Notes: generated by a model from the sequence alone, not told the origin. A stretch of 62,929 nucleotides of DNA, filler included, from Perkinsus chesapeaki ATCC PRA-425 (GCA_013115145.1; 9 parts of 9 records of this genome joined end to end with filler, not necessarily neighbours in it), one strand, 5' to 3'. Shown: positions 2,203 through 20,335, numbered from the whole stretch's first letter. Program-made: numbers and translations.

Positions 2203-2710
2203 GTGTATGATATGGTACAGTTCATTAAGCCCTTCTAACCTCAAGGGCCCTTAGTGATGTAAATTACACAAATAAGCTGTTTGGGGCGAGCGACAGTCAC
2301 ACAGTGTGACTCACACTTCATTTTACTTGGTACTCGCGCTTTGATTAATGAATAAGTATCTGGGTCGAGTGATCTCGTCGCTTTCGAGAGTGCACCGAGA
2401 CACTCGGCCCATTCGCCGAGGTCGCTACGGCGGCCTCCGGCCCGCGCCCCACCGCCAGGGAGAAAAGGCCGGGTAAGTGCGGTCAACTCGTTGGGCTGGT
2501 TTACTCGGCCGGGACGCCCCGTTGCGCAAGATAAGGGGACAGAAGCTGCGTTGTCTAGCGTGAGTGTTGCAGCACTCGTGCTGGTAGTCTCACCCTCCGA
2601 TACCCAGTTGCAGTAATTATCCCCTTTTATTAATTATGCGCCCCAATATTAAATTACGTGCCCCAGAACGATCAGCTCAACCAACCAATGATTTAGCAAT
2701 CTCACACATG

Positions 2711-7354: not shown

Positions 7355-10300
7355 TCACTTCTCTGCCTTGTAGACAGAGAAAGACCTCGTCACAAAGCGA
7401 CTTCGGGTTTCAGCCAAGATGCTGGAGACCATTACAGTCACACTGGACCAGTGCCACTAGTACTGAATTATACCAGTAACCACAACTACAACCGTAGCGG
7501 TGATGATGATGACACTCAACACGAGACTACCGTACATTTAAATGACATCAGATAAAGTTGGTAACATCAAAGCATGTAACAACATCAACCACACAACTAC
7601 ATGTGCAAAAATCTATCAACAACAAGATATAACTCAGGACAGCTTCCTCCAGGAGCTGCCTTCTCGCGCCGTCCAATGGTTCCCCTTCACACGAGGGGCC
7701 ATACGAGATGTCTGTGTGGAGACTGATGAATCTGGAAATGAACTGAGCACACAATCGGGGACAGCCCGCCCCACCGTTGCTCGAAAATCTCTTGCGGTTG
7801 CGAATAACCTTCCACTCCCCCTCTTCCGAGGTTTGCGAGGCAGAGATGCCGCTGATGCCTTGGTACACCGTGGAGACCGATGTGAACTTCGCTGGATCCG
7901 AGGCTAATATACGATAAGTCTATCAACACTTTGGCCGCGCGGTGGTACAGTAAGCTGCGACGATCCTTTTCATTTCACTGACGTACAAGTCTCCTTTTGG
8001 TTTTTTTAACATCATACTTCTGAGCTTCGCAATGAGAGGGTCTTCCTCATCAGGGAGATTAATGACCTTCAGAAAGCTACCAGTTAATGTGATGGCATCC
8101 TTGCTAACCTTGAACTTTATAAACAACTCGACCAGCTGCACGGCGGTCTCGAGAAGGCCACAGGTCACCGCGCTGCCCAGTAGAGTCTCAACTGTCTGCC
8201 GATTGATGACGTCCACTCTGTTTCGTGGTGCCAAGTTACCTACGAAAGAGCGCTAGCCGCGTGAGAAGTGCCGGAGAAGTCATACGCGTATTGGCGGTGC
8301 TCTTGGGCACCGATGGCTGCGGGTGATCCGGCTGAAGGTTACGCATATGCCGACCGATCATGCTGCCACAAATCCTTAAGGTCACTCCACCATTGCGCTG
8401 CCTAATCTGACAAAGCCCAGCGTTACTCGCCAACATGGAAGATCGTGCGTTACTGCTTGCTGAGCTAGCTGTGTGTAGAGTCTTAGTTCGGGAATGACAC
8501 CATATTCTTCCTCCATCTTAACCTGAACACGCTTAATATATTCATCTTCATAACGATCTTATTCCTAGTCATTTATCTCATACTCTCTTATAATATGCAT
8601 ATTAATAGATGCCGTCACAAAACTCCCGATCGCCTCATCCCCTACATCTAGTAAGTTGAGACACTCTTCGAAGACTGCGTTGTATTTCTCCCTCAGCTCC
8701 TCGGCAGTGCTCTGCGATGGTTGATCTCCTATAGTAGCAAATATGACCTTCATAAGAATACTGAACGTCGCGCTGGAACCGGAGACCTGACAATGCCAGA
8801 TCATGACGACGCAACGACGGAATTCTTCATACCGCTCTTCGTTTCATTTCTGCCAAAATAGCACTCGCGAGCTGCCGTCTCTCCTTGAATGGCGCCAGTG
8901 ATGCCAGGACAGGAGTGCAACAGCCGAGGAGAAGGTTGTTGAAGATTATCTCATCCGGGTCAAACCCAGCGTCCTGCACGAAGGCCTCCGATTGAAATGC
9001 AATGGAGAAACAATCTCACCAGCATCTCCTTCAGCAGACCTAGGCTGACATTGGCTCTCCCGCAATCGCAATTAACTTTGATAAGAATCGAAAACGTTAT
9101 CAAATCAGGTGCCACCCCACAGTTCTTCATCTCATCGTATCTGCATCCATTTCCAATACTGTGTAGCTACTTCCACCTACACGGTCATCGCCGCGTCAAC
9201 TTGGCCGTCTTTTGCATGCCCCTTGATAAGCGTTGTGTACATAACCTATAACTTTGCCTGTCCAAGTGGAAGACTATAGGAGCTCTCACTGTATTCAGCG
9301 CGAAGCCGTCACTCTGATCGGAGCCGCCGATATTCTGCCTTTGGCGCATTTCTTGGAACACTTTCTTGGCGCGTGACATGTCACCGGCATTTATACAGCA
9401 ATCGAGGAATATGCCATACGTGACGACTGTTGGGAAGATCTGAGACCGGACTCGAGAGCTGATCCGAGTCTGAGAGCTTCTCGCTACCTCTTGGGACTTC
9501 ATTTGCTTCATCAGATGGGCGCACTTGATGACATCGCCAATTCGGGCATGCCTGAAAGAAGAGTGAGATACTTATGCGTAGAAGAGTTGCCAACTCCTTA
9601 TTAAAAGGGAGTCTACCGAAAAGTAGCTGTGCGGAGGGGTCGTACTGGTCTCGCCTTTCAGAAGAGGGAAGTGTTATCCACTAACAGTATCCTATCCCTT
9701 TACCCCGCATACTGCCACTATCAAGAGTCTTGATTCAAGACACTATAGATCTTGTTGCACTATAACATAATTTTATATTTACTAAATTGTAGACAGATGT
9801 GTTAAAGCAAAACCGCTTTGGGTTCACAGATTTACGATGCATTCCTGCTTCAAACATGGAGCTCCTCCTCCTCCTCGTCGTCGTCATCGTCGTGGTGGTA
9901 GTGAAGGTCTGCCAGAATGCACCCCGGGCCTTACTAGTGCACCTTCATCTATATACCCAACTCTCAGCTCTCATAACGGTCAGTTCAAATCAAGTTTCAT
10001 GTCGATGTGGGCGGCGGCGATCTCTACGCGAGTTGCTATAGGCTTTAATTCCCTTACGTCGGAAGATCCAATACCAACTTCCTGTACCGCTTCGGATACG
10101 GCGACATTGAAGGTCCAAAAACAAACTAAAGTTTAGTTTGTTTTTGGACCTTCAATGCTTTTATTTAGCATTGCTTTCAATGCATTTTTCAATGGGTTTA
10201 GTTACTAAACCCGTCTAGATATTATTATGACCAATAATATCTTTCCCTCACCGCAATAATTAATTTTTGTCAGTCGCTTGTCTGCTATGGTATATTATCT

Positions 10301-12063
10301 ACTACTAGTGTCCTATCCCTTTAACCTACCTACTGCCACTATAAAGCCATTATAGCCACTGATGGTCCCCTACAGCACGATTCCTTCCCCAATACCCACC
10401 CTTTCATCACAGTGTTGTACGTCACAACATCTGCAGCTCCTCCTCCTCTTCGGTCCTCCTCCTCCCCCCCCTCGCCAATAGGTTTAGCCATCTCATCTAG
10501 TAGTGACTCCGCCATATCAAGTTCCCGTCGATTCACGCACCCGCTGATAACACTGTTGCATCTGCCAACAGGTAGCGATCCTCTCCAGCCAGCTTGACCT
10601 GCCCCCTACGTCACAACGTCAAGCGGCAATCCTGTCTCTCGCATGCTTTGTATGACCCCGACCGCCTTATCAGCTTCTCCGCTATACGCATAGCACTTAA
10701 CCATATTACACAGATCCTACAAGGTAACTGCCGACTCTATCGCTCCTGTCATCACCTTGGGACTCGGACCGTCTACAGTGGACTTAAGCCGGTCGAAATA
10801 CAACTCGCAGATTTCCAAATCTTTCGCTTCAACTGAAAAGCACAATTCTGATAAATATGGATACTTCAGCAAACACCTGCGCAGAGCAATAGGCAACTAT
10901 TAATGGTCTTGTCCAAGACAGGTGACAGCCCTAGCTCCGACTCCAGGAGTTTCCGGTGGATCCACAGACACTGAGGAGGCACATTCGCCATTTCAGGGCT
11001 GGCGGCGAGCACCTTCTTGTAGAGATGCTTTGAGGTGCACATCTTCGTTATGCTGATGAGAGTGTCGATGGGGATATCCAAACCAAGCTGAACGAACAAC
11101 AAACACGATTGAGTGTGGCAGGGAGGTTCGAATATCATCACACAGGGATACTCTATAATGCTTATAAATCTAAATAAGCAAGCGTTAGTGAAACCAAAAT
11201 GACTATGACAGCTAACCACCACTGGATGGCACCATTGGGCCTTCTAGCGGCTCCTCTATACCGTCGTGAGTGATCCACGAAAGTAGCCTATTGCTTACCT
11301 TCACCATATCTCTCAGTACTTCCTCAACTTCAATCCGCTCCTCCCTATTCCCACTAGAATCGGTCATCACTTCGCCCTCTCGAAGAGACCGCGGGCTACT
11401 GCAGACTCTCACAGCCGCCAGGCAGAGTGACGATAACATTTCCGTGATCGACGCTCGGACATCCTCGGCGTTCTGCGAAACCTGAATTGGTAAATTCAAC
11501 CGCCAGACGAAGTGGCTGCAGTTCGCACCTCGCCCAGAAGGTCGCTGAGTTCGCCAGAGGCAATGAGTCGACGGTACATGAAGACCGCCGCATTGAAGCG
11601 GCTCCCTGTGAGCCTTGTTATAGTGGTAACGGTCTCGGTAACCTGGGCAACAGTTCATAACCGGATTTTAGAGCAAGTCCCTACCGATGGGGCATGCTCG
11701 CATTCTAGAACCATGTTATTCGAGCAGGGTTCATGAGACATGGCGTCCAAGGCAGCGGTATTGGGGCCTGAGTGCGCTTGAAATGAGCGAATGAAGGGGT
11801 TAGGACTGCTGACCTGATTTGGTAGGGGCGTAGAGAGTGGTTCGTAAAGAGCTGCTTTGGGAAACAATCAGACAGAGAACTATGGCTGTGCCTATTATGA
11901 GTTCGATCCACATGGATTCTACAACTTCCGCAATAATAAGAGATATTGATTCGCCCAACGAGAAGCGTGGTGAGCTTTCAGCGTCTGACAAGTCGTGGAC
12001 TGCTGCTTCGGTGGCTAGCAGGATCGATAGGATCCAAATGGCTCTGATGTGGCTATGAGGCAT
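7355..12063 (-). CDS. Pentatricopeptide repeat (PPR) protein with N-terminal signal peptide and transmembrane segment (multi-exon)
   Basis: PPR motifs ADVVTYNTVMKGWV, PTVVTYGIFLDCCINAGDMSRAKKVFQEM and ELDMAESLLDEM. N-terminus MPHSHIRAIWILSILLATEA...WIELIIGTAIVLCLIV. A predicted 45-nt intron joins the in-frame ORFs 7923-8234 and 7548-7868. The 3' end is approximate. Confidence 0.75.
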
Positions 12064-12724
12064 GACAGAGAACGAGACAATACTGCAATTAACCTTGAAC
12101 CAGCTCCCGGTGGGGAAGTTGCGCTGATTGGGGTGAGCGCTCGAATATTAGAAAATTAAGGAAGCTCAAGCGTGCAAGATTTAATTTTTTTACAGTGGAA
12201 TCCACTGAAGCGGCTGCCGGGGCCGAACGCACGCACATTTCGGGTTGAACGTCCGCACACGCGTAGGGAAAGGTATACTATGGTTGATCAGCGGGCCTTC
12301 GGCCCGCTATGGTTTTCAAGCTTTCAATTATCCATAATACCTCGCATTGGCCGAATTGGAGAAAAACCCAGAAAACGACCGGGAGTGGGTATCGAACCGG
12401 CGAGTTTGTGCAATTGTGCACGCGTGCAGCGAAACGAGCCATGTTCAGCTTAGTACGCTCTGCCCGGGTTCTTCTGGGAACGATTATGGCGCTTTGTGTG
12501 TGTTCATTCATTCGAATTACGGTGTTTTTAGTTCTTTCACTCTGATGTCCACACTGTCACAGTGCCAGGCACTGTCATCTCCAACGGAACCCTTTTGCAC
12601 GGAATTTCCATGATGGAAAGAATCGAAACAACCGAAGCTACGCTCAGTGTTGGGTATAGATGATACGCTGTTGAGTTGCACTTATTACATGGAAGCCGGG
12701 GCAATCATAGTCATGATGCTGATG

Positions 12725-13770: not shown

Positions 13771-16700
13771 CTAGTCACCATCGCGCCTTGGCAAATGAGC
13801 TTGTTCTGGCCGACGGCGGCAGCTGAAGCAAAACCATCGCTTTTTGTTTCCAATTTTATCTAGGTGGCCGCCTGGAATCCCAGAGAATGATGCATAAGCT
13901 TCCACGCACTTGGTATGCCACCAGCCGACGTCACAATTGGTGTTACTGCACTCAATCATATCCACTGAAATTGAGTAACCAGAATGACATACACAATAAT
14001 CCTCCTGGCTAGTTCCATCATATTCAGGCCACTTGATACCGTCATAAATATGGGGTACTTGACGTTCCTTTCCGGACGGGAACTCGCCAGGCAAGTCAGT
14101 TCTGGCTCTCTTCCTGCGCAAACCATAGCGGATATCATTGGGAAGAGTTTGCTCGTCCAGCTGGCCATCCCCACGGCGTCGCAGCTGTGAGCGGCTAAAA
14201 TAGCAATTCGCTGTCTCCCATAGTTTTAAAGTGCGCACACACTTTTCCTCGCCTAGCGCATACTTCAGGCACAGAACGTGCGAACACGTTAGACCGAGAG
14301 ACCATTGATGGCAGGTACACCACATACACCTTGCTGTCTCACCCTCATATTGAACAGATGAGATCCGTACCACGGAGTACAACTTTTTTAGTCTATGAGC
14401 CTCTGCCAGATTAGAGTAATCGTGCTTACTCACCGCAGTTATATCGTTTTTCAGGCTACTGCACATTAGTTCATCGAAGGATGCATTCTGGAGAAGTCTA
14501 CTTGAGCGGCCAGCTTTGGCAGCGGAGAAGAGCCACCTGTCGTAGGGGTCCTCGACGCCCAACCTGGGCATTTCACAATAGTTTCCCTTTAGGTAATGAT
14601 CGGCTGCACCCTTCACCAACTTCTCCGTAGTCTCGCCTCTCACGTTGTCCCGCCCGTATTGGGACACCATCGCCCATCGGGCCGCATCCTCGAGCGTGGC
14701 AGTTAGGTCATTCAAGGTGAGCCGTTGCCGATTTGGGATCAACACACCTTTCAGCTCCTTATTCAGCCTTTCCACGGAGTTATTTGTCCGAGGTGCCTCA
14801 GTCTCTCCGCCGTATGTCCCCCAGAAACTGCGCCAATCCGATGGATCGAAATACCCCTTGAAATGTCGGAGGAACTGCTCCAGAGAGCTTCTTTCGGACT
14901 CGGTGAGCCTCGGTGGTCGTTCTGAAATTCAGAACGAATATTCAGAGCCTGAATATACAGGAGTATCCCTTTAGTCCCGAAAAATTTGATTTATTCGAAA
15001 AAGTACATTTTCTCGGGACACCCTGTGGAAAGAAGAGAAACCTATCAGACAGAATGACTCTCGTACATTGACTCGTAGGGATTCGTAGGGACTCTGAGGG
15101 ATTTTCTCGGCATCTGGTGTATCTCGAAGAGTTAGGAGCAACGAAGGTGGATTAATCAATGACTACCAGAATATTATGCATAGAGAGAAGATACCTAGGA
15201 CAGTCATTGATTAATCCACCTCCGTTGCTCCAAACTCCTAAAAAAGCACTAAAAATATGTAACATAATGTTACGCAGTGTGCTGATATAGCCCGTCAGAA
15301 ATATTGCCTACCTGCCGACCATTTCTTCATGAACAGGTCCCTGAGCTCAAGCCATTCTCCGCGACTCCCACTCTCGCCCATCAGGTTCAGGTCTTTTTTC
15401 ACTTCAAGCCAGAGACTTCCGCTTAGGCGACTCTTTCCTTTGGCGACTTTGGCATTCTGCATGACGTGGAAGTAGCAGCTCTTACAGGTAACAGATTCCC
15501 TCCCGTAACAGTCCACCAGGGCCTTATGTATGGCTCCACTACCATCCAAGACTGCTTCCTCAGGAGCCACTGTGCCCAAGCCAGCGGCGTGTGCCGCCTT
15601 GGAAAGCTCGCGGAGGCCATGCTCCAGACAGCTGCTAGACTCTTTATTCATGATGATTAAGGCAACTGGCTGGGCAGTAGAAGTTCTGGGAAGTGAGCAT
15701 ACTACACCCACCGCCAAGTCGGCGTGGGTGATATTAAAAGTTGCATCGAGACCTATCGTGCGACAGTTCTCCAAGTTGCATAACATCCGCGCACTCGTGA
15801 CCACTGCTGAGAACGCCTTCACTCCCCTGCGGTTACCAACAGCTGGACCAGGCTCACACAGTATGTTATCTAGCACAACACATCTGTCAGCAGTCCGGGG
15901 CCCGGACTCCGGGCACGGGTCAGATCATCGGGAGTATGCCTGCCTTCCGAAACTGCGAGCAAGCTGCGGATTGTCTCGGAGATATCGGTTCTCATTTCAG
16001 CCATGCTAATTGCCATCCTCTCGAGTCGGCGACAGAACTCGAAAACGCTCAGACCGGAACTCTTCGACTCTTTGATGGACCTTAGCACCTGCCTGACGGC
16101 CTCATAGTTCTTAAGTCCCTTGTTTGTCAAGAACTCCATCGTGGCCGATGAGTACGATCCTTCCAAGTTCTTGCGGAGACTCCGAGCTTCTAAGTCCTTC
16201 TTCTGCAAGATCGGCTCGCGTTGTAGCCACATGATCCAGTCATCAACGATATCTGGTGGTATGGTTTTGCTCCTACATACCGTGGTTCCAGGGAAATGGG
16301 CATGATCCTTCCATTGAGTCGCAGACGCCTGCACGTCTCTCAAGGCATAAAAATATGTGTAACCCTCGCGCTCCTGAACTCTCACCTCGCGCAGGGGACA
16401 GGTGAAAGCCTCCCACGACCGCCAGTCTGGTTTTCCTCCTTCAGCAGCAGGCTTGCCAGCATTCCTACTTCCGACAGTTCGCTGACACTCCAGATAGCAA
16501 GTTTGTCTTGCCCTCAACCCGTCCAGGCTTGTATGCATGAGGCGGAAGTGGTCATTGTCGGCAAGATATAATGCCACCACTTCACGAAGAGCACCCTCGT
16601 ATGCTGCGTAAGGCTCATCAAGGAACCGGGTTTCCCCCGCAGGAGGATCATCGGGCCTCACAGGAACTTCGAGGCCTTCCGGAGCCACCGAATTGCAGCT

Positions 16701-18036
16701 GGAACCTGAAATATACTTATCTTATATCAGTATGTATGTTCTTCTCACCATTTGTGTGGTCTGAGAGCTCGTCGGGTTCAGCGTAAGGATCTTCCAATAG
16801 AAGCGAAATATCTCCATTAGAATCACTCTGGCTGCATCTAAAAGACACGCTCGGTGACCCCCCATATTCTGTGCGTCGTGATATACAGTCATTTGTGGAG
16901 GGGTGTTTCAAGGGAAGTGTCAGTGGCATAATATGTACCTGTCTGAGTAACTGGTGTGCTCCTCGTGAATCTCTATACTCTCATCTTGATCAGGGCATCC
17001 TTGAGAAGGCCGAATTTCCGGGGCATCCGATGTTCCTGAACGAATGAAGTAAGTGCACCATGTAACAAGCCACGTCCTATTATAGGACTCCTAGATCGTC
17101 ATTTGAGAATGCTACTCAGGAACCGGAAAACTCACCTTGGCCCTCATGGCACTCATTGCCTCTGGAACCATTGCTTGTTGGTCGGAAGCTACCGGAGGCT
17201 GCGTTATCAGCGAGCTCGTCAACGACTTGGTCTAAGCTTTCTTGGTTGAGCTTAGGGAAAGTAAGGTTTAGCTTCTCGTGAAGAAGTTCAAAAAAGCGCA
17301 TTTGCAGTTCTATTGGCATGCTCTCTACTTTCTCAATTAGTTGCGGTCTTGCCGCACAATAATACACGGGGTTAGTGGGGTCACCGGTCATAGAATGCTG
17401 GTTCATCGCATAGTTCTGGGATGCCATCATGATGAATTTAAACTTCCTCAGTTCGTCACCCAAAGCATCGATCCTCTCCGCAAGGTGGGTGATGGTATTA
17501 TCAGAGTTAATTGACTCACCACTGGCCGGCTGGTCTGTTGTGTCTGGACCCCTCGTCGGGGGCACTATAGACAACCAGTTACGCTCTGAACATTGCTTAT
17601 CGAAACGCAGGGCTGCTGCATCCATGGTAAATATAGGCCATACCTTGGAGTTCTCGAGTGTACTCTTCAGGGGGAAGACTTTTATATATTCTGCTCCTGG
17701 CACCCGACTAAGAACAGTATATGCTACGCCCTGTAACCATGGTGCTTCCCAGAACCGAGCAACAACATCGTGGGCCGTCCTAGAATTATACTTGACTGAC
17801 CTTGCTGACAAGTAACCCCAGACACCAGCCAGGGTAGCACCCACAACTTTATGGGCTGTCACTGCATAGCATGCCGTAAGGGGGATCTGGCGACGCTCGA
17901 ACACTATCTTGCCGTCGATTGTCCTGACGATCATCGATTCTCGCTTGACATGGATAGGTTGCTCACAGTTATCGAAGTCCACGATGACAGTGGGGTGATG
18001 GGATTCATCGTTATATATTCTCACCACTGTACCCAT
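13771..18036 (-). mobile_element. Mutator-like (MULE) transposase gene, predicted spliced fusion: Pif1 helicase C-terminal domain - MULE DDE domain - SWIM - PHD finger
   Basis: Pif1 motifs RRQIPLTACYAVTAHKVVGATL and QGVAYTVLSRV. MULE motifs GLDATFN, VLDGSGAIHKAL, CYFHV and RTNNSVERLNKELK. SWIM CTCHQWSLGLTCSH. PHD YCVC...IECSNTNCDVGWWHTKCV...WFCFSC. Predicted introns 17036-17135, 16838-16938, 16706-16748, 15870-15943 (GC-AG) and 14922-15311 keep one frame: 3558 nt = 1186 codons. Confidence 0.8.
15129..15237. repeat. 36-bp inverted repeat (2 mismatches) with 37-nt spacer, inside transposase intron 5
   Basis: gagttaggagcaacgaaggtggattaatcaatgact (15129-15164) versus agtcattgattaatccacctccgttgctccaaactc (15202-15237). 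Confidence 0.85.
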
Positions 18037-18257
18037 CGCAGCGAGTGGATGCGCAACAACATGCGAACGAATGACATGTTGGTTGAAGCACTACCCAGTC
18101 ATGTTTGGTCCCCGCGTATCACATTGATGCATACATGATAGACCGACTCCAGTCTCTCTGGGCCAACCGTCGAGTCCTGTGGCATACCATGTCATCATAA
18201 CGACGTAACGAATACGATACTTGTTTGACAACAACACCACAGCACGTTGTTCGGATC

Positions 18258-18310
18258 TTAGATTAAGAATCTTAATCTAATTTAGATTAATCAATCTTAA
18301 TTTTAGATTG
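18258..18310. repeat. AT-rich palindrome plus degenerate (ttagatt/aatctt) repeats
   Basis: Perfect ttagattaaga-a-tcttaatctaa at 18258-18280, followed by partial copies. Confidence 0.75.
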
Positions 18311-19630
18311 TTAATGCATATCAAAGTACCATAGAGTAGTCGGACTGAATGGAGATGGTTGGAAGGCCAGCTGAAACACGGGGTAGATACGCAGGACATC
18401 ACTCTTAGCAGCGCATCGATCCATTGCACGCGTGCATAGCTTTTGAAATGAGGCAAGATATAGCCGATTATGACAGCGAGCTTCAGGCATGCGGTATGCT
18501 TGCTGCTCAGCGAACATATGTCGCACAGCAGATGGCATGGTGCCAGTCAGCTGGTGTTACAGTTTCACTCCCGTGGACAGGTTTACGCACCAGGTTGTTC
18601 TCGAGCGTCGAATCATCTGTAGCCGAATCGATGGCCCATACCGGTCGATTACCAGCCTAGCGAGTCACTCATAGCAGACCTCCAATAGCATAATGATACT
18701 CCCTGAGTGCTTAATTCTGGCGTACTGCCTCGGTCCTCCTCCTAAAGGCTATGTTCCGGCTCGACAATACCCTTCGCAAACTGTCGCAAACTGTCGCAAA
18801 GTCTTTCGGCAACTACTTTGAAGCGTGCCGTGAATTCCTAGACGGATTATCATGAGTCATGATTCATGACCACGAGTAGAATCTCATCATTGCTTTAAAT
18901 ACCCGCCTCTTGCTTGGAGTTTCAGGGAAGCCGATTACCTTAATCACTCGGGAGGGCTCGGAGGGACTAGCCTATTCACAACGTGGCCTGGAGTCGAGGA
19001 TGAGGTGAGATCATATTCCTGAGATGGACCGCCTTTGCGACGCAAAGTTTGCGCCACACGTTGGACTTGCGCTGCAGAGCTTCTAGGCTAGTATGGCTCA
19101 TGCTATATGAAACTCTAATGCCCAAACGAATCGAGACATTATAACAGCCTGAACGTGCGAACGAGTCCGAGGAAGCTGGGATACTATAATCTCTCTTAAA
19201 ATCTGTAACGAGAGTATTATTTGATAACAAAGGTCGCACTCAAAGACTTAGCCTTCGACGACGCGAGAATCTTACTCAAATTGGTACACAAGCAAAACCC
19301 ACAAGAAAAAGCCCGTCAATGATGACATTCGTTCAAGGGCAAGACTTTATTGCAGAGTCGCGACATTGTTGTGCCAACACAAGCTTTTCAAGTATGTGGC
19401 TTGGACTGTGTACACTAATGCTACGTAGGTAGCTAAGCTAATCCAGAACCAGTTCATTAGATAAGCATGCTTATTGTGCCCAGTTACATAAGATTCCGAG
19501 TGTCAAGGATCTAATCAATAGTCTCATCAGCTTACAACTTATTTGTTAACTTATTATATGTCTTCTTATCTGACTATACTCTACGGGCTTCTGTTGTCAT
19601 GTGTTTATACGTAAGTGATCAGGAAGCCAC

Positions 19631-20335
19631 TTGGGAAATATACCCCGAGAGACTGGCATACAAGCACAGTCAATCTCGAGCTTGAATTCTTGGATGGCGG
19701 TTCTGCTAAATACAAGATCTACTCCCCTCACCATGACATTTTGGACTATTGACTCCTACCGTGTTGTGATGCTCGGCCCTGCTGTATTTGCCGTCAAGGT
19801 CCCCCAATTTCGAGTGAACTATTGGTTGCACGAGCTGCCGGGCAGGTTCGAAGAATGGGGGCTGCGCGTCTTCTTCTATCACCCCTTGCTCGACATGATT
19901 ACCGTAAACGCGGCTGGACGTACCTTCCAGATAGCGCGTGCTTCGGACCCAGTGGAAAAGATCGCAGTCATTGACCCCAAGCAACCGGATGGTACTTATC
20001 AAAGTATCGAAGCCGGGTTGGAAGTGACTATGGAATTCGATTCGGCAAGAAGTCGTGCCATGTACCACTTACTATTACGAGATAAGGAATACGACTTCCC
20101 CTTCGACGTTGACTTTACCATGCTAAGCACCAGCTTGATTCGGGTGTGGGTGCCACAACACCAACTCTATGCCCTCCATGGAAGGTTTCCCGGTTTATCA
20201 CACGATTACTTCTATCTCAATCTCGGCTACGACCCTGTAAACAACGAAATTACATTCCTGCTCGATGAACTGCGCCAGGTAACGCTGAAAAATGTCCAAC
20301 CTATTACTACTACTACTACTGCTAATGAGTGTTAA
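19631..20335 (+). CDS. Hypothetical protein (up to 234 aa), intronless, apparent two-fold internal repeat
   Basis: Long clean ORF; likely start at an internal Met (MAVLL or MTFW). Two similar segments, VKVPQ...FFYHPLLDMITVNAAGRTFQI and VWVPQ...LGYDPVNNEITFLLDELRQVTL. Confidence 0.6.
   Translation: MGNIPRETGIQAQSISSLNSWMAVLLNTRSTPLTMTFWTIDSYRVVMLGPAVFAVKVPQFRVNYWLHELPGRFEEWGLRVFFYHPLLDMITVNAAGRTFQIARASDPVEKIAVIDPKQPDGTYQSIEAGLEVTMEFDSARSRAMYHLLLRDKEYDFPFDVDFTMLSTSLIRVWVPQHQLYALHGRFPGLSHDYFYLNLGYDPVNNEITFLLDELRQVTLKNVQPITTTTTANEC

What the first reader, a model, noticed from the sequence alone, without database searches (positions are those of the whole stretch)
13771..18036. Hidden spliced fusion: Pif1 helicase + Mutator transposase + SWIM + PHD in one protein
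Seen: four separate ORFs in the track, plus a 97-nt exon (16939-17035) absent from it, can be joined by five introns with compatible phases. These are 17036-17135 (GTGAGT...TTCAG), 16838-16938, 16706-16748, 15870-15943 (GC-AG) and 14922-15311. Together they give 3558 nt, an uninterrupted 1185-aa protein from the ATG at 18036. Domain order is Pif1/SF1B helicase C-terminal half, linker, MULE catalytic core (GLDATFN...LDG...CYFH...TNNSVE), SWIM, PHD. Established: Pif1-like helicases are typical of Helitrons, SWIM is common in MULE transposases, and PHD fingers read histone H3 tails. Inference: this is a cut-and-paste element that has fused a 5'-3' helicase and a chromatin reader to its transposase, perhaps for unwinding, gap repair or chromatin-guided targeting. 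I do not know of this architecture being described in alveolates. The N-terminal helicase half upstream of 18036 looks decayed in this copy, and I could not find TIRs.
Basis: partly seen in the sequence, partly recalled or inferred. Interest (0 to 1): 0.85.

Follow-up and report, generated by a model that had tools for sequence, protein, structure and literature searches.

The report
Helicase-fused Mutator transposon, broken copy
This stretch of the oyster parasite Perkinsus chesapeaki holds a damaged copy of a jumping gene whose cutting enzyme is fused to a Pif1-type DNA-unwinding motor, a combination conserved across three Perkinsus species that I could not find described in the literature.

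Summary
The join is not hidden. NCBI model FOL47_009177 (1098 aa) already uses the same first three introns.

The fusion is real as a family trait. In relatives 31-59% identical, from P. olseni, P. marinus and P. chesapeaki, single uninterrupted ORFs run from the helicase C-half through the MULE core. A Pif1 N-half with Walker A and B motifs lies just upstream on the same strand.

These genes sit inside true transposons:
- L006: 10.9 kb, terminal inverted repeats (TIRs) 100% identical.
- L001: 15 kb, TIRs 579 bp.
- L007: 7.35 kb, with a perfect 9-bp target-site duplication.

The window copy is defective:
- It has only the 3' end (tip near 12218), and no 5' TIR.
- No helicase N-half is detectable.
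- The ATG at 18036 is an internal helicase codon.
- The "GC-AG intron" is spurious. It hides a 14-nt palindromic insertion (15895-15908) that shifts the frame through conserved residues.
- Intron 5 and exon 3 are supported by conserved positions. Introns 1 and 2 rest on prediction only.

The PHD finger is below Pfam's threshold but conserved in a distant paralogue. No RNA evidence could be obtained.

The parts
12214..12420 (-). 3' terminal region of the element, homologous to the TIRs of complete relatives. The tip CGGGGCC lies at about 12218.
   Evidence: tblastx and alignment to the L001 and L006 TIRs; sequence read.
12291..12307 (-). Conserved subterminal GC hairpin motif GCGGGCC-GAAG-GCCCGC.
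   Evidence: Exact match in the window with 0 expected by chance. The same motif lies in both TIRs of L001 and L006 and in the 5' TIR of L004.
13771..14921 (-). Last exon: transposase C-terminal part with the catalytic E (TNNSVE, 14770-14787), SWIM (14278-14328), PHD-type finger (13819-13998) and the stop codon.
   Evidence: PHD: Pfam E 9e-4 and homology to L007:10966-11205 (E 6.5e-7).
14922..15311 (-). Intron 5 (GT-AG, 390 nt). Its position is conserved in L001 and L006. It holds a 36-nt-arm inverted repeat at 15129-15237.
15312..15894 (-). MULE catalytic core exon: D in GLDATFN (15733-15753), D in VLDGSGA (15532-15552), CYFH (15466-15477). Family homology in this frame runs upstream to about 15894.
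   Evidence: Pfam PF10551 E 7e-8; family alignment; frames.
15895..15908 (-). 14-nt palindromic insertion AGTCCGGGCCCCGG that shifts the reading frame.
   Evidence: All seven relatives encode conserved residues here, and the window encodes them in two frames.
15909..16705 (-). Exon 4: conserved Cys/His-rich N-terminal domain of the transposase (16212-16634) and the region up to the frameshift.
   Evidence: AlphaFold model pLDDT 89.9 with no PDB fold match.
16706..17135 (-). Acidic linker with predicted introns 1-3 (17135-17036, 16938-16838, 16748-16706) and short exons 2 (17035-16939) and 3 (16837-16749).
   Evidence: Same junctions as the NCBI model. The exon 3 acceptor and G|GTGAG donor, its phase and a DELSD motif are conserved in L005. 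Introns 1 and 2 have no comparative or RNA support.
17136..18090 (-). Helicase C-terminal half: 2B/SH3-like part, motif V TAHKVVGATL (17830-17859) and motif VI YTVLSRV (17701-17721). A family-specific conserved module follows, down to about 17260.
18091..18093 (-). In-frame TAG just upstream of the last detectable helicase homology. No helicase N-half is detectable beyond it.

Best explanation
The window carries a defective copy of a Mutator-like (MULE) DNA transposon family found so far only in Perkinsus. Its single large, few-intron gene encodes one protein. The parts run in this order:
- a Pif1-family SF1B helicase;
- a family-specific conserved module and an acidic linker;
- a Cys/His-rich N-terminal transposase domain;
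- the MULE DDE core;
- a SWIM finger;
- in the P. chesapeaki lineages, a C-terminal PHD-type finger.

Intact relatives are bounded by long TIRs that share a subterminal GC hairpin motif, and by a 9-bp target-site duplication.

The window copy keeps the 3' end, the transposase and the helicase C-half. It has lost the helicase motor half and the 5' TIR, or they lie beyond the contig. It also carries a 14-nt frameshifting insertion, so it is most likely a non-autonomous pseudogene.

Inferred mechanism:
- The DDE part cuts and pastes the element at its TIRs, as shown for the MULE Muta1 (PMC5499845, abstract seen).
- The tethered 5'-3' helicase most likely opens the structured, GC-rich, repeat-laden ends.
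- It may also drive long-tract repair synthesis that restores the 7-15 kb element at the donor site. This draws on the known role of Pif1 in break-induced replication, which I cite from my own knowledge.
For: Shown:
1. Co-linearity in one reading frame. L001:9977-12859 is a single 960-aa ORF from the helicase C-half to the MULE core. Single tblastn alignments span the same parts in L003 and L004. P0016 has PIF1 and MULE Pfam hits in one model.
2. A helicase N-half lies upstream on the same strand, with PF05970 hits (E 4.7e-21 in L001, 1.5e-14 in L006). Walker A, DE and GDPCQ motifs are visible. The NCBI model P0003 splices the two halves into a contiguous Pif1 sequence.
3. A family-only profile of the C-half hits only Pif1 helicases in the PDB (E 2.7e-11 to 4e-8).
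4. Transposon ends. L001 TIRs are 579 nt at 98% identity. L006 TIRs are 112 nt at 100% and 150 nt at 99%. L007 TIRs are about 115 nt with a perfect 9-bp TSD, CCTTCACAC. The hairpin motif is shared by the TIRs and by window 12291-12307.
5. Defects of the window copy: no N-half, a frameshift, and no inverted partner of the 3' end.
6. The catalytic D, D, E, the CxxH motif and the SWIM residues are conserved across the family.
Against: - There is no transcript evidence for any copy.
- The helicase halves are separated by gaps in every locus, from about 50 nt to 1.4 kb. A complete helicase-transposase polypeptide therefore still depends on predicted splicing.
- The main clade has V in place of the canonical Q in motif V (TAHKxVG). 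Helicase activity is unproven.
- The 14-nt insertion could not be checked against reads.
- The PHD finger is below Pfam's threshold and was not found in the P. marinus or P. olseni copies.
- The TSD of L006 is offset by 3-4 nt from the perfect arms, and L001 shows no clear TSD.
- The role of the helicase in transposition is pure inference.
Confidence: 0.8

Rival explanations
1. Chance adjacency. A self-contained MULE transposase gene lies next to an unrelated Pif1 or Helitron fragment, and the spliced join is an artefact of choosing compatible GT..AG pairs.
For: Frame compatibility is worthless here: 26,354 possible intron chains link the two ORFs. There is no RNA support. The helicase part of the window is only a fragment.
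Against: The same order and strand occur in at least seven loci of three species at 31-59% identity. Uninterrupted ORFs cross the junction in L001, L003 and L004. No Helitron Rep domain appears in any Pfam scan.
Confidence: 0.03
2. The window gene is intact and makes the reader's 1185-aa protein from the ATG at 18036, using a real GC-AG intron.
For: The spliced frame is open. Motifs V and VI, the DDE residues, SWIM and PHD are all intact in the retained parts. Automated NCBI annotation also calls a long protein here.
Against: The 'intron' encodes about 20 residues that all seven relatives keep, including a conserved ADxC-containing stretch. The ATG aligns to an internal conserved Met. There is no ATPase half, no 5' TIR, and an in-frame TAG at 18091.
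Confidence: 0.07
3. Passenger helicase. The family once captured a host Pif1 gene, as Pack-MULEs capture genes, and the helicase plays no part in transposition.
For: MULEs are known for acquiring host gene fragments (PMC6446971 abstract). The helicase profile matches cellular and bacterial Pif1 rather than the Helitron helicase. L007 has 97-98% identical TIRs and a perfect TSD, yet its helicase starts only at motif II, right beside the 5' TIR. So a copy without Walker A has moved, perhaps with help in trans.
Against: The helicase is full length, in frame with the transposase, and keeps Walker A and B, motif III and the motif VI arginine across lineages only 31-59% identical. That pattern is not expected of an unselected passenger.
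Confidence: 0.15
4. A domesticated host gene family derived from a MULE, now immobile and serving the cell.
For: The paralogues are deeply diverged and each is in low copy number. The ORFs are conserved between species. Domesticated MULE genes are known in other alveolates (PMC3558436).
Against: TIRs are 97-100% identical and a 9-bp TSD is present. The window copy is decayed. Tblastx found no shared sequence in the flanks outside the elements. Many copies lie on short repeat-type contigs.
Confidence: 0.05

Closest known systems
MULE / Mutator superfamily (MuDR, Muta1, TvMULE, Phantom and others)
   Same: Pfam MULE DDE core, CxxH motif, C-terminal SWIM finger, long TIRs and a 9-bp TSD.
   Different: A complete Pif1-family helicase is fused N-terminally to the transposase. 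The elements are 7-15 kb. The N-terminal Cys/His domain has no WRKY/FAR1 Pfam hit and no Foldseek match in the PDB. The survey of MULE architectures in PMC6446971 never uses the word helicase.
Rehavkus (MULE-related; known from Repbase for arthropods and annelids, per PMC6446971)
   Same: PHD finger in the transposase, 9-bp TSD, TIRs of tens to hundreds of bp, and a minisatellite before the 3' TIR. L001 has a 42-nt array at 16086-17315 next to its 3' TIR.
   Different: No helicase is reported for Rehavkus, and the hosts differ. No Rehavkus sequence was available, so kinship was not tested. The PHD was found here only in the two P. chesapeaki lineages.
Helitron / Helentron RepHel proteins (e.g. 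Helraiser, PDB 7LCC)
   Same: A Pif1-family helicase is covalently fused to the enzyme that moves the element.
   Different: The partner here is a DDE transposase, not an HUH Rep. The element has TIRs and a TSD. Helraiser matches only when canonical Pif1 rows are added to the profile (E 1e-7 against 2e-17 for Pif1), and not with the family alone.
AcademH DNA transposons (recalled from memory, not checked here)
   Same: A eukaryotic cut-and-paste DDE element that also encodes a helicase.
   Different: As I recall, that helicase is superfamily 2, not Pif1/SF1B, and the transposase belongs to another superfamily.
NCBI gene model FOL47_009177 (P0001, 1098 aa; UniRef name 'SWIM-type domain-containing protein')
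   Different: It bridges the frameshift with a different pseudo-intron.

Membership tests
MULE (Mutator-like) transposon | MULE-type DDE transposase domain | tested here: met
   PF10551 at 33.3 bits against a 27.6-bit cut-off, E 7e-8, on window 15295-15876. D, D, E and CxxH are conserved in the family alignment.
MULE (Mutator-like) transposon | Terminal inverted repeats bounding the element | tested here: met
   Met in relatives: L001 579 nt at 98%, L006 112 nt at 100% and 150 nt at 99%, L007 about 115 nt at 97-98%. The window has only the 3' end, near 12218-12420, and no partner.
MULE (Mutator-like) transposon | Target-site duplication of about 8-11 bp | tested here: met
   L007 has a perfect 9-bp TSD, CCTTCACAC, directly abutting both TIRs. 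L006 has a 12-nt direct repeat offset by 3-4 nt. L001 has none clear. The window cannot be tested because one end is missing.
MULE (Mutator-like) transposon | SWIM zinc finger downstream of the catalytic core (common, not universal) | tested here: inconclusive
   The CxCx8CxH motif is at 14278-14328 and conserved in four family members. Pfam SWIM is sub-threshold (E 0.089 in L006, no hit in the window).
MULE (Mutator-like) transposon | N-terminal WRKY/GCM1- or FAR1-type DNA-binding domain | tested here: not met
   No Pfam hit. A confident model of the conserved Cys/His domain (pLDDT 89.9) has no PDB fold match (best E 0.1, TM at most 0.33). This domain varies among MULE clades, so the failure does not exclude membership.
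Pif1-family SF1B helicase | PIF1 domain with Walker A, Walker B and motif III | tested here: not met
   Not met in the window: no N-half by tblastn or profile search. Met in relatives: PF05970 E 4.7e-21 (L001) and 1.5e-14 (L006), with GxxGxGK[ST], DE and GDxxQ motifs present.
Pif1-family SF1B helicase | C-terminal 2A/2B domains with motifs V and VI | tested here: met
   The family-only profile hits only PDB Pif1 helicases, E 2.7e-11. T, H, G of motif V and Y, S, R of motif VI are invariant, the window included. The window alone gives no Pfam or PDB hit.
Pif1-family SF1B helicase | ATP-dependent 5'-3' unwinding activity | not testable with these tools
   This needs a biochemical assay.
Helitron | HUH Rep endonuclease domain N-terminal to the helicase; no TIRs and no TSD | tested here: not met
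   No Rep or Helitron_like_N hit in any Pfam scan of family proteins. The elements have TIRs and a TSD.
Rehavkus | PHD finger in the transposase plus a minisatellite before the 3' TIR | tested here: inconclusive
   PHD: PF00628 E 9e-4, below the cut-off, conserved in L007, absent from L001 and L006. The minisatellite is present in L001 and absent from the window. No Rehavkus sequences were available for a tree.
PHD finger (histone-tail reader) | C4HC3 zinc-binding pattern and an aromatic cage for methyl-lysine | tested here: inconclusive
   The Cys/His spacing fits a PHD regular expression. A conserved GWWH lies in the position of the cage tryptophan in both the window and L007. Histone binding was not tested.

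The most novel reading that the evidence does not exclude
Perkinsus hosts a distinct lineage of Mutator-superfamily transposons in which a Pif1 helicase is an obligatory, covalently attached part of the DDE transposase. Helicase activity would be needed for mobility, for example to open the hairpin-bearing, repeat-rich TIRs or to drive break-induced copying of the 7-15 kb element. That would be the first cut-and-paste DDE element with a Helitron-like dependence on an SF1B motor. In some lineages a PHD finger would steer it to marked chromatin.
Probability: 0.4. Interest if true: 0.8.

Novelty: new variant of a known kind. Interest (0 to 1): 0.68.

Why it matters
Fusion of the transposition enzyme to a Pif1-family helicase is otherwise the hallmark of rolling-circle Helitrons. 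Finding it on a classical TIR/TSD, DDE-type Mutator element would show that transposons of unrelated mechanism recruited the same motor independently. It would also give a tractable system for asking what a helicase adds to cut-and-paste transposition: opening the ends, synapsis of long structured TIRs, or repair-coupled copy restoration. The P. marinus copy L006 has 100% identical TIRs and apparently intact ORFs, which makes it a good candidate.

There is a practical side. Public annotations of three Perkinsus genomes split or mis-splice these genes, as in P0003, P0005, P0013 and FOL47_009177. P. marinus is also being developed as a genetic system (PMC8062965), where an endogenous active transposon could be either a tool or a nuisance.

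The window copy itself is an ordinary decayed copy. Its value is as the pointer to the family.

Tried and rejected
- **RNA evidence.** The look-up of sequencing runs listed no RNA run holding the stretch. It gave only two tiny same-species runs with a word share of 0.00. The junctions and the 14-nt insertion are therefore unverified by reads.
- **Direct searches with the window helicase ORF.** Pfam and PDB gave nothing.
- **Word-based protein searches.** The search for homologous proteins on the last exon found nothing, and on P0001 it found only itself. This method is too insensitive at 31-59% identity.
- **Decayed helicase N-half upstream of 18093.** Relaxed tblastn gave colinear, same-frame scraps at 18465-18121. 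A family HMM found nothing there (E>1), so I rejected the scraps as unsupported.
- **A 5' TIR in the window.** No inverted partner was found. The 21-nt pair 12417-12437/18416-18436 reflects a shared palindrome and was rejected.
- **Fold of the N-terminal transposase domain.** The model is confident, but Foldseek found no significant PDB match.
- **Literature.** Six full-text searches found no paper describing a Pif1-MULE fusion or Perkinsus MULE elements beyond a count of 21 MULE-domain proteins.
- **ESM Atlas.** The nearest large clusters are plain MULE/SWIM proteins, none with PIF1.
- **Other sequence in the window.** Its flanks, the intron-5 hairpin and its upstream 2.3 kb have no match in the other loci.
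Full report
**Observation.** The introns are 100, 101, 43, 74 (GC-AG) and 390 nt, exactly as described. Frame compatibility alone carries no weight. An exhaustive search found 26,354 GT..AG chains of at most three introns that link the ORF ending at 17116 to the ORF starting at 16688.

Pfam recognises only the MULE domain above its cut-off (PF10551, E 7e-8). The helicase ORF gives no Pfam or PDB hit on its own. SWIM and PHD are visible as Cys/His patterns. The isolated PHD piece scores PF00628 E 9e-4 over the whole profile, which is below the gathering score.

**What is already on record.** An exhaustive profile-free search with the helicase ORF returned a 100%-identical, 1098-aa protein. It is NCBI's 'hypothetical protein FOL47_009177 [Perkinsus chesapeaki]', on a contig of 20,398 bp.

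**The fusion is a conserved family architecture.** The same search found relatives at 31-57% identity, and several carry a MULE domain downstream of the helicase match (P0006, P0013, P0016, P0021).
- Their DNA shows that no splicing is needed to join the parts. L001:9977-12859 (from the P. olseni-group assembly GCA_013115135.1) is one 960-aa ORF running from the helicase C-half through the linker and the N-terminal transposase domain to the MULE core.
- Single tblastn alignments cover the same span in L003 (P. chesapeaki) and L004 (P. marinus).
- Just upstream, on the same strand, lie ORFs with PF05970 PIF1 hits (E 4.7e-21 in L001, 1.5e-14 in L006). They carry Walker A (GYAGTGKS, GYPGCGKT), Walker B (DEV) and GDPCQ motifs.
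- In P. marinus, NCBI's model P0003 splices the two halves into a contiguous Pif1 sequence.
- A profile built only from family C-halves hits only Pif1 helicases in the PDB: Bacteroides, human, yeast and thermophile enzymes, E 2.7e-11 to 4e-8. The Helitron protein Helraiser does not appear at E 0.01 or better. It appears at 1e-7 only when canonical Pif1-like rows are added.
- All protein hits with a source name are from P. marinus, P. olseni or P. chesapeaki. The rest come from unnamed Logan assemblies.

**These genes sit in real transposons.**
- L001 has 579-nt TIRs at 98% identity, enclosing 15,052 bp. A 42-nt minisatellite lies next to the TIRs, and a 3.5-kb array of 32/96-nt repeats lies upstream of the helicase.
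- L006 (P. marinus GG673310) has arms of 112 nt at 100% and 150 nt at 99%, enclosing 10.9 kb. A 12-nt direct repeat lies 3-4 nt outside the arms.
- L007 is a distant lineage in the window's own genome. It has TIRs of about 115 nt at 97-98% and a perfect 9-bp TSD, CCTTCACAC, directly abutting both ends.
- The TIRs of L001, L006 and L004 share a subterminal hairpin motif, GCGGGCC-GRAG-GGCCCGC.

**The window copy has one end.** The window has this motif once, exactly, at 12291-12307. It is in the orientation of a 3' end, with the conserved tip CGGGGCC near 12218. Its inverted partner does not lie in the remaining 2.3 kb of the contig.

**The window copy is defective.**
- Homology to the family begins at about 18069. 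The region LKxGCRVM that precedes it in all relatives is gone.
- The ATG at 18036 aligns with the conserved internal Met of NGxMGTV, and an in-frame TAG lies at 18091.
- Neither tblastn nor a family HMM detects any helicase N-half. A few colinear scraps found at relaxed settings are not significant.
- The retained part keeps motifs V and VI. It cannot be an ATPase.

**The 'GC-AG intron' is not an intron.**
- Frame 1 reads ...DDLTRAR and then runs into a stop at 15870.
- Frame 0 reads RTADRCVVLDNILCEPG across the supposed intron and acceptor.
- Relatives read ...DL.RAR.AD.C.VLDNILCEPG continuously.
- The two frames are separated by a 14-nt palindromic insertion, AGTCCGGGCCCCGG, at 15895-15908.

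**The other introns.**
- Intron 5 is supported. Its position (KKWSA^ERPP) matches L001 and L006, where it is much shorter.
- Exon 3 is supported. In L005, the closest relative at 56-59%, the acceptor, the G|GTGAG donor, the length class (83 or 86 nt against 89 nt, all 2 mod 3) and a DELSD motif are conserved.
- Introns 1 and 2 rest only on good-looking sites and an ab initio gene model.

**The C-terminus.** The residues NCBI splices out are conserved in L006. The PHD-type finger is conserved in L007, in an ORF that the annotation missed (tblastn E 6.5e-7). No PHD was found in the P. marinus or P. olseni copies.

**Mechanism.**

Shown:
- a DDE MULE core with conserved D, D, E and CxxH;
- TIRs and a 9-bp TSD, which mean cut-and-paste transposition;
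- a Pif1-family helicase with intact ATPase motifs in several lineages, in the same gene.

Inferred:
- The transposase binds the TIRs and excises the element, as shown for the MULE Muta1 (PMC5499845). The conserved subterminal hairpin is a candidate binding site.
- The tethered 5'-3' helicase either opens the GC-rich, repeat-laden ends or promotes long-tract repair synthesis that restores these unusually long elements at the donor site. Cellular Pif1 does this in break-induced replication (my own knowledge).
- L007 has moved although its helicase starts only at motif II, beside the TIR. The helicase may therefore act in trans or be dispensable. I put about 0.4 on an integral role.

**Comparison with known systems.** By domain, TIRs and TSD this is a MULE.
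- It resembles Rehavkus in having a PHD finger, a minisatellite before the 3' TIR and a 9-bp TSD (PMC6446971). That kinship was not testable here.
- It works like a Helitron only in having a Pif1 motor fused to the mobility enzyme. It lacks Rep and has TIRs, so it is not a Helitron.
- The conserved Cys/His N-terminal transposase domain models confidently (pLDDT 89.9) but matches no PDB fold.
- I found no paper describing a Pif1-MULE fusion. The nearest large ESM Atlas clusters are plain MULE/SWIM proteins.

**Verdict.** The window copy is an ordinary broken copy. It points to an apparently undescribed helicase-fused variant of Mutator transposons with strong comparative support.

Noticed in passing
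window 15892-15914: The frameshifting insertion reads GCCCGG + AGTCCGGGC + CCCGGACT. This is a local 9-mer (GCCCGGACT) partly duplicated, with an inverted copy between the two parts. It looks like the palindromic footprint left when a hairpin-forming transposon with a 9-bp TSD excises, or like a template-switch mutation.
   Followed up: partly
window 2429-2445 (minus strand): A second near-copy of the TIR hairpin motif (GCGGGCCGGAGGCCGCC, 2 mismatches, 0 expected by chance). It has the same orientation as the 3' end at 12291. Only the motif aligns to the TIRs. It may be a remnant of another element's end.
   Followed up: partly
window 15129-15237: A 36-nt-arm inverted repeat (94% complementary, 37-nt loop) lies inside intron 5. 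This intron is 390 nt here but only tens of nt in L006. It could be a small hairpin element inserted in the intron. No copy was found in the other loci.
   Followed up: partly
L001:4318-7864 and L001:8944-9383: A 3.5-kb array of 32/96-nt tandem repeats is read in frame directly into the helicase N-half ORF (repeats of about 32 aa). A 182-nt-arm inverted repeat sits in the 1.2-kb gap between the two helicase halves.
   Followed up: no
window 16212-16634 (and family alignment A6): The conserved Cys/His-rich N-terminal transposase domain gives a confident AlphaFold model (pLDDT 89.9, pTM 0.82). It has no significant Foldseek match in the PDB, so it may be an undescribed DNA-binding fold.
   Followed up: partly
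L007:5558-5699: In this TIR- and TSD-bounded copy the helicase ORF begins at motif II (IIFDEISM), 27 nt after the 5' TIR. It is a deletion derivative that apparently still transposed.
   Followed up: no
window 10105-10157 and 9674-10477: A perfect 26-nt palindrome, and a pair of repeats of about 52 nt spaced 621 nt apart with CCT/CGT-rich tracts. These are unrelated to the element.
   Followed up: no
window 18255-18340: An AT-rich palindromic low-complexity stretch (taatctaaattagattaag...) lies just upstream of where helicase homology is lost. It may mark the truncation breakpoint.
   Followed up: no
window 19631-20335 (plus strand): A 234-aa ORF with no Pfam hit, antisense to a 120-aa ORF. 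Its nature is unknown.
   Followed up: partly
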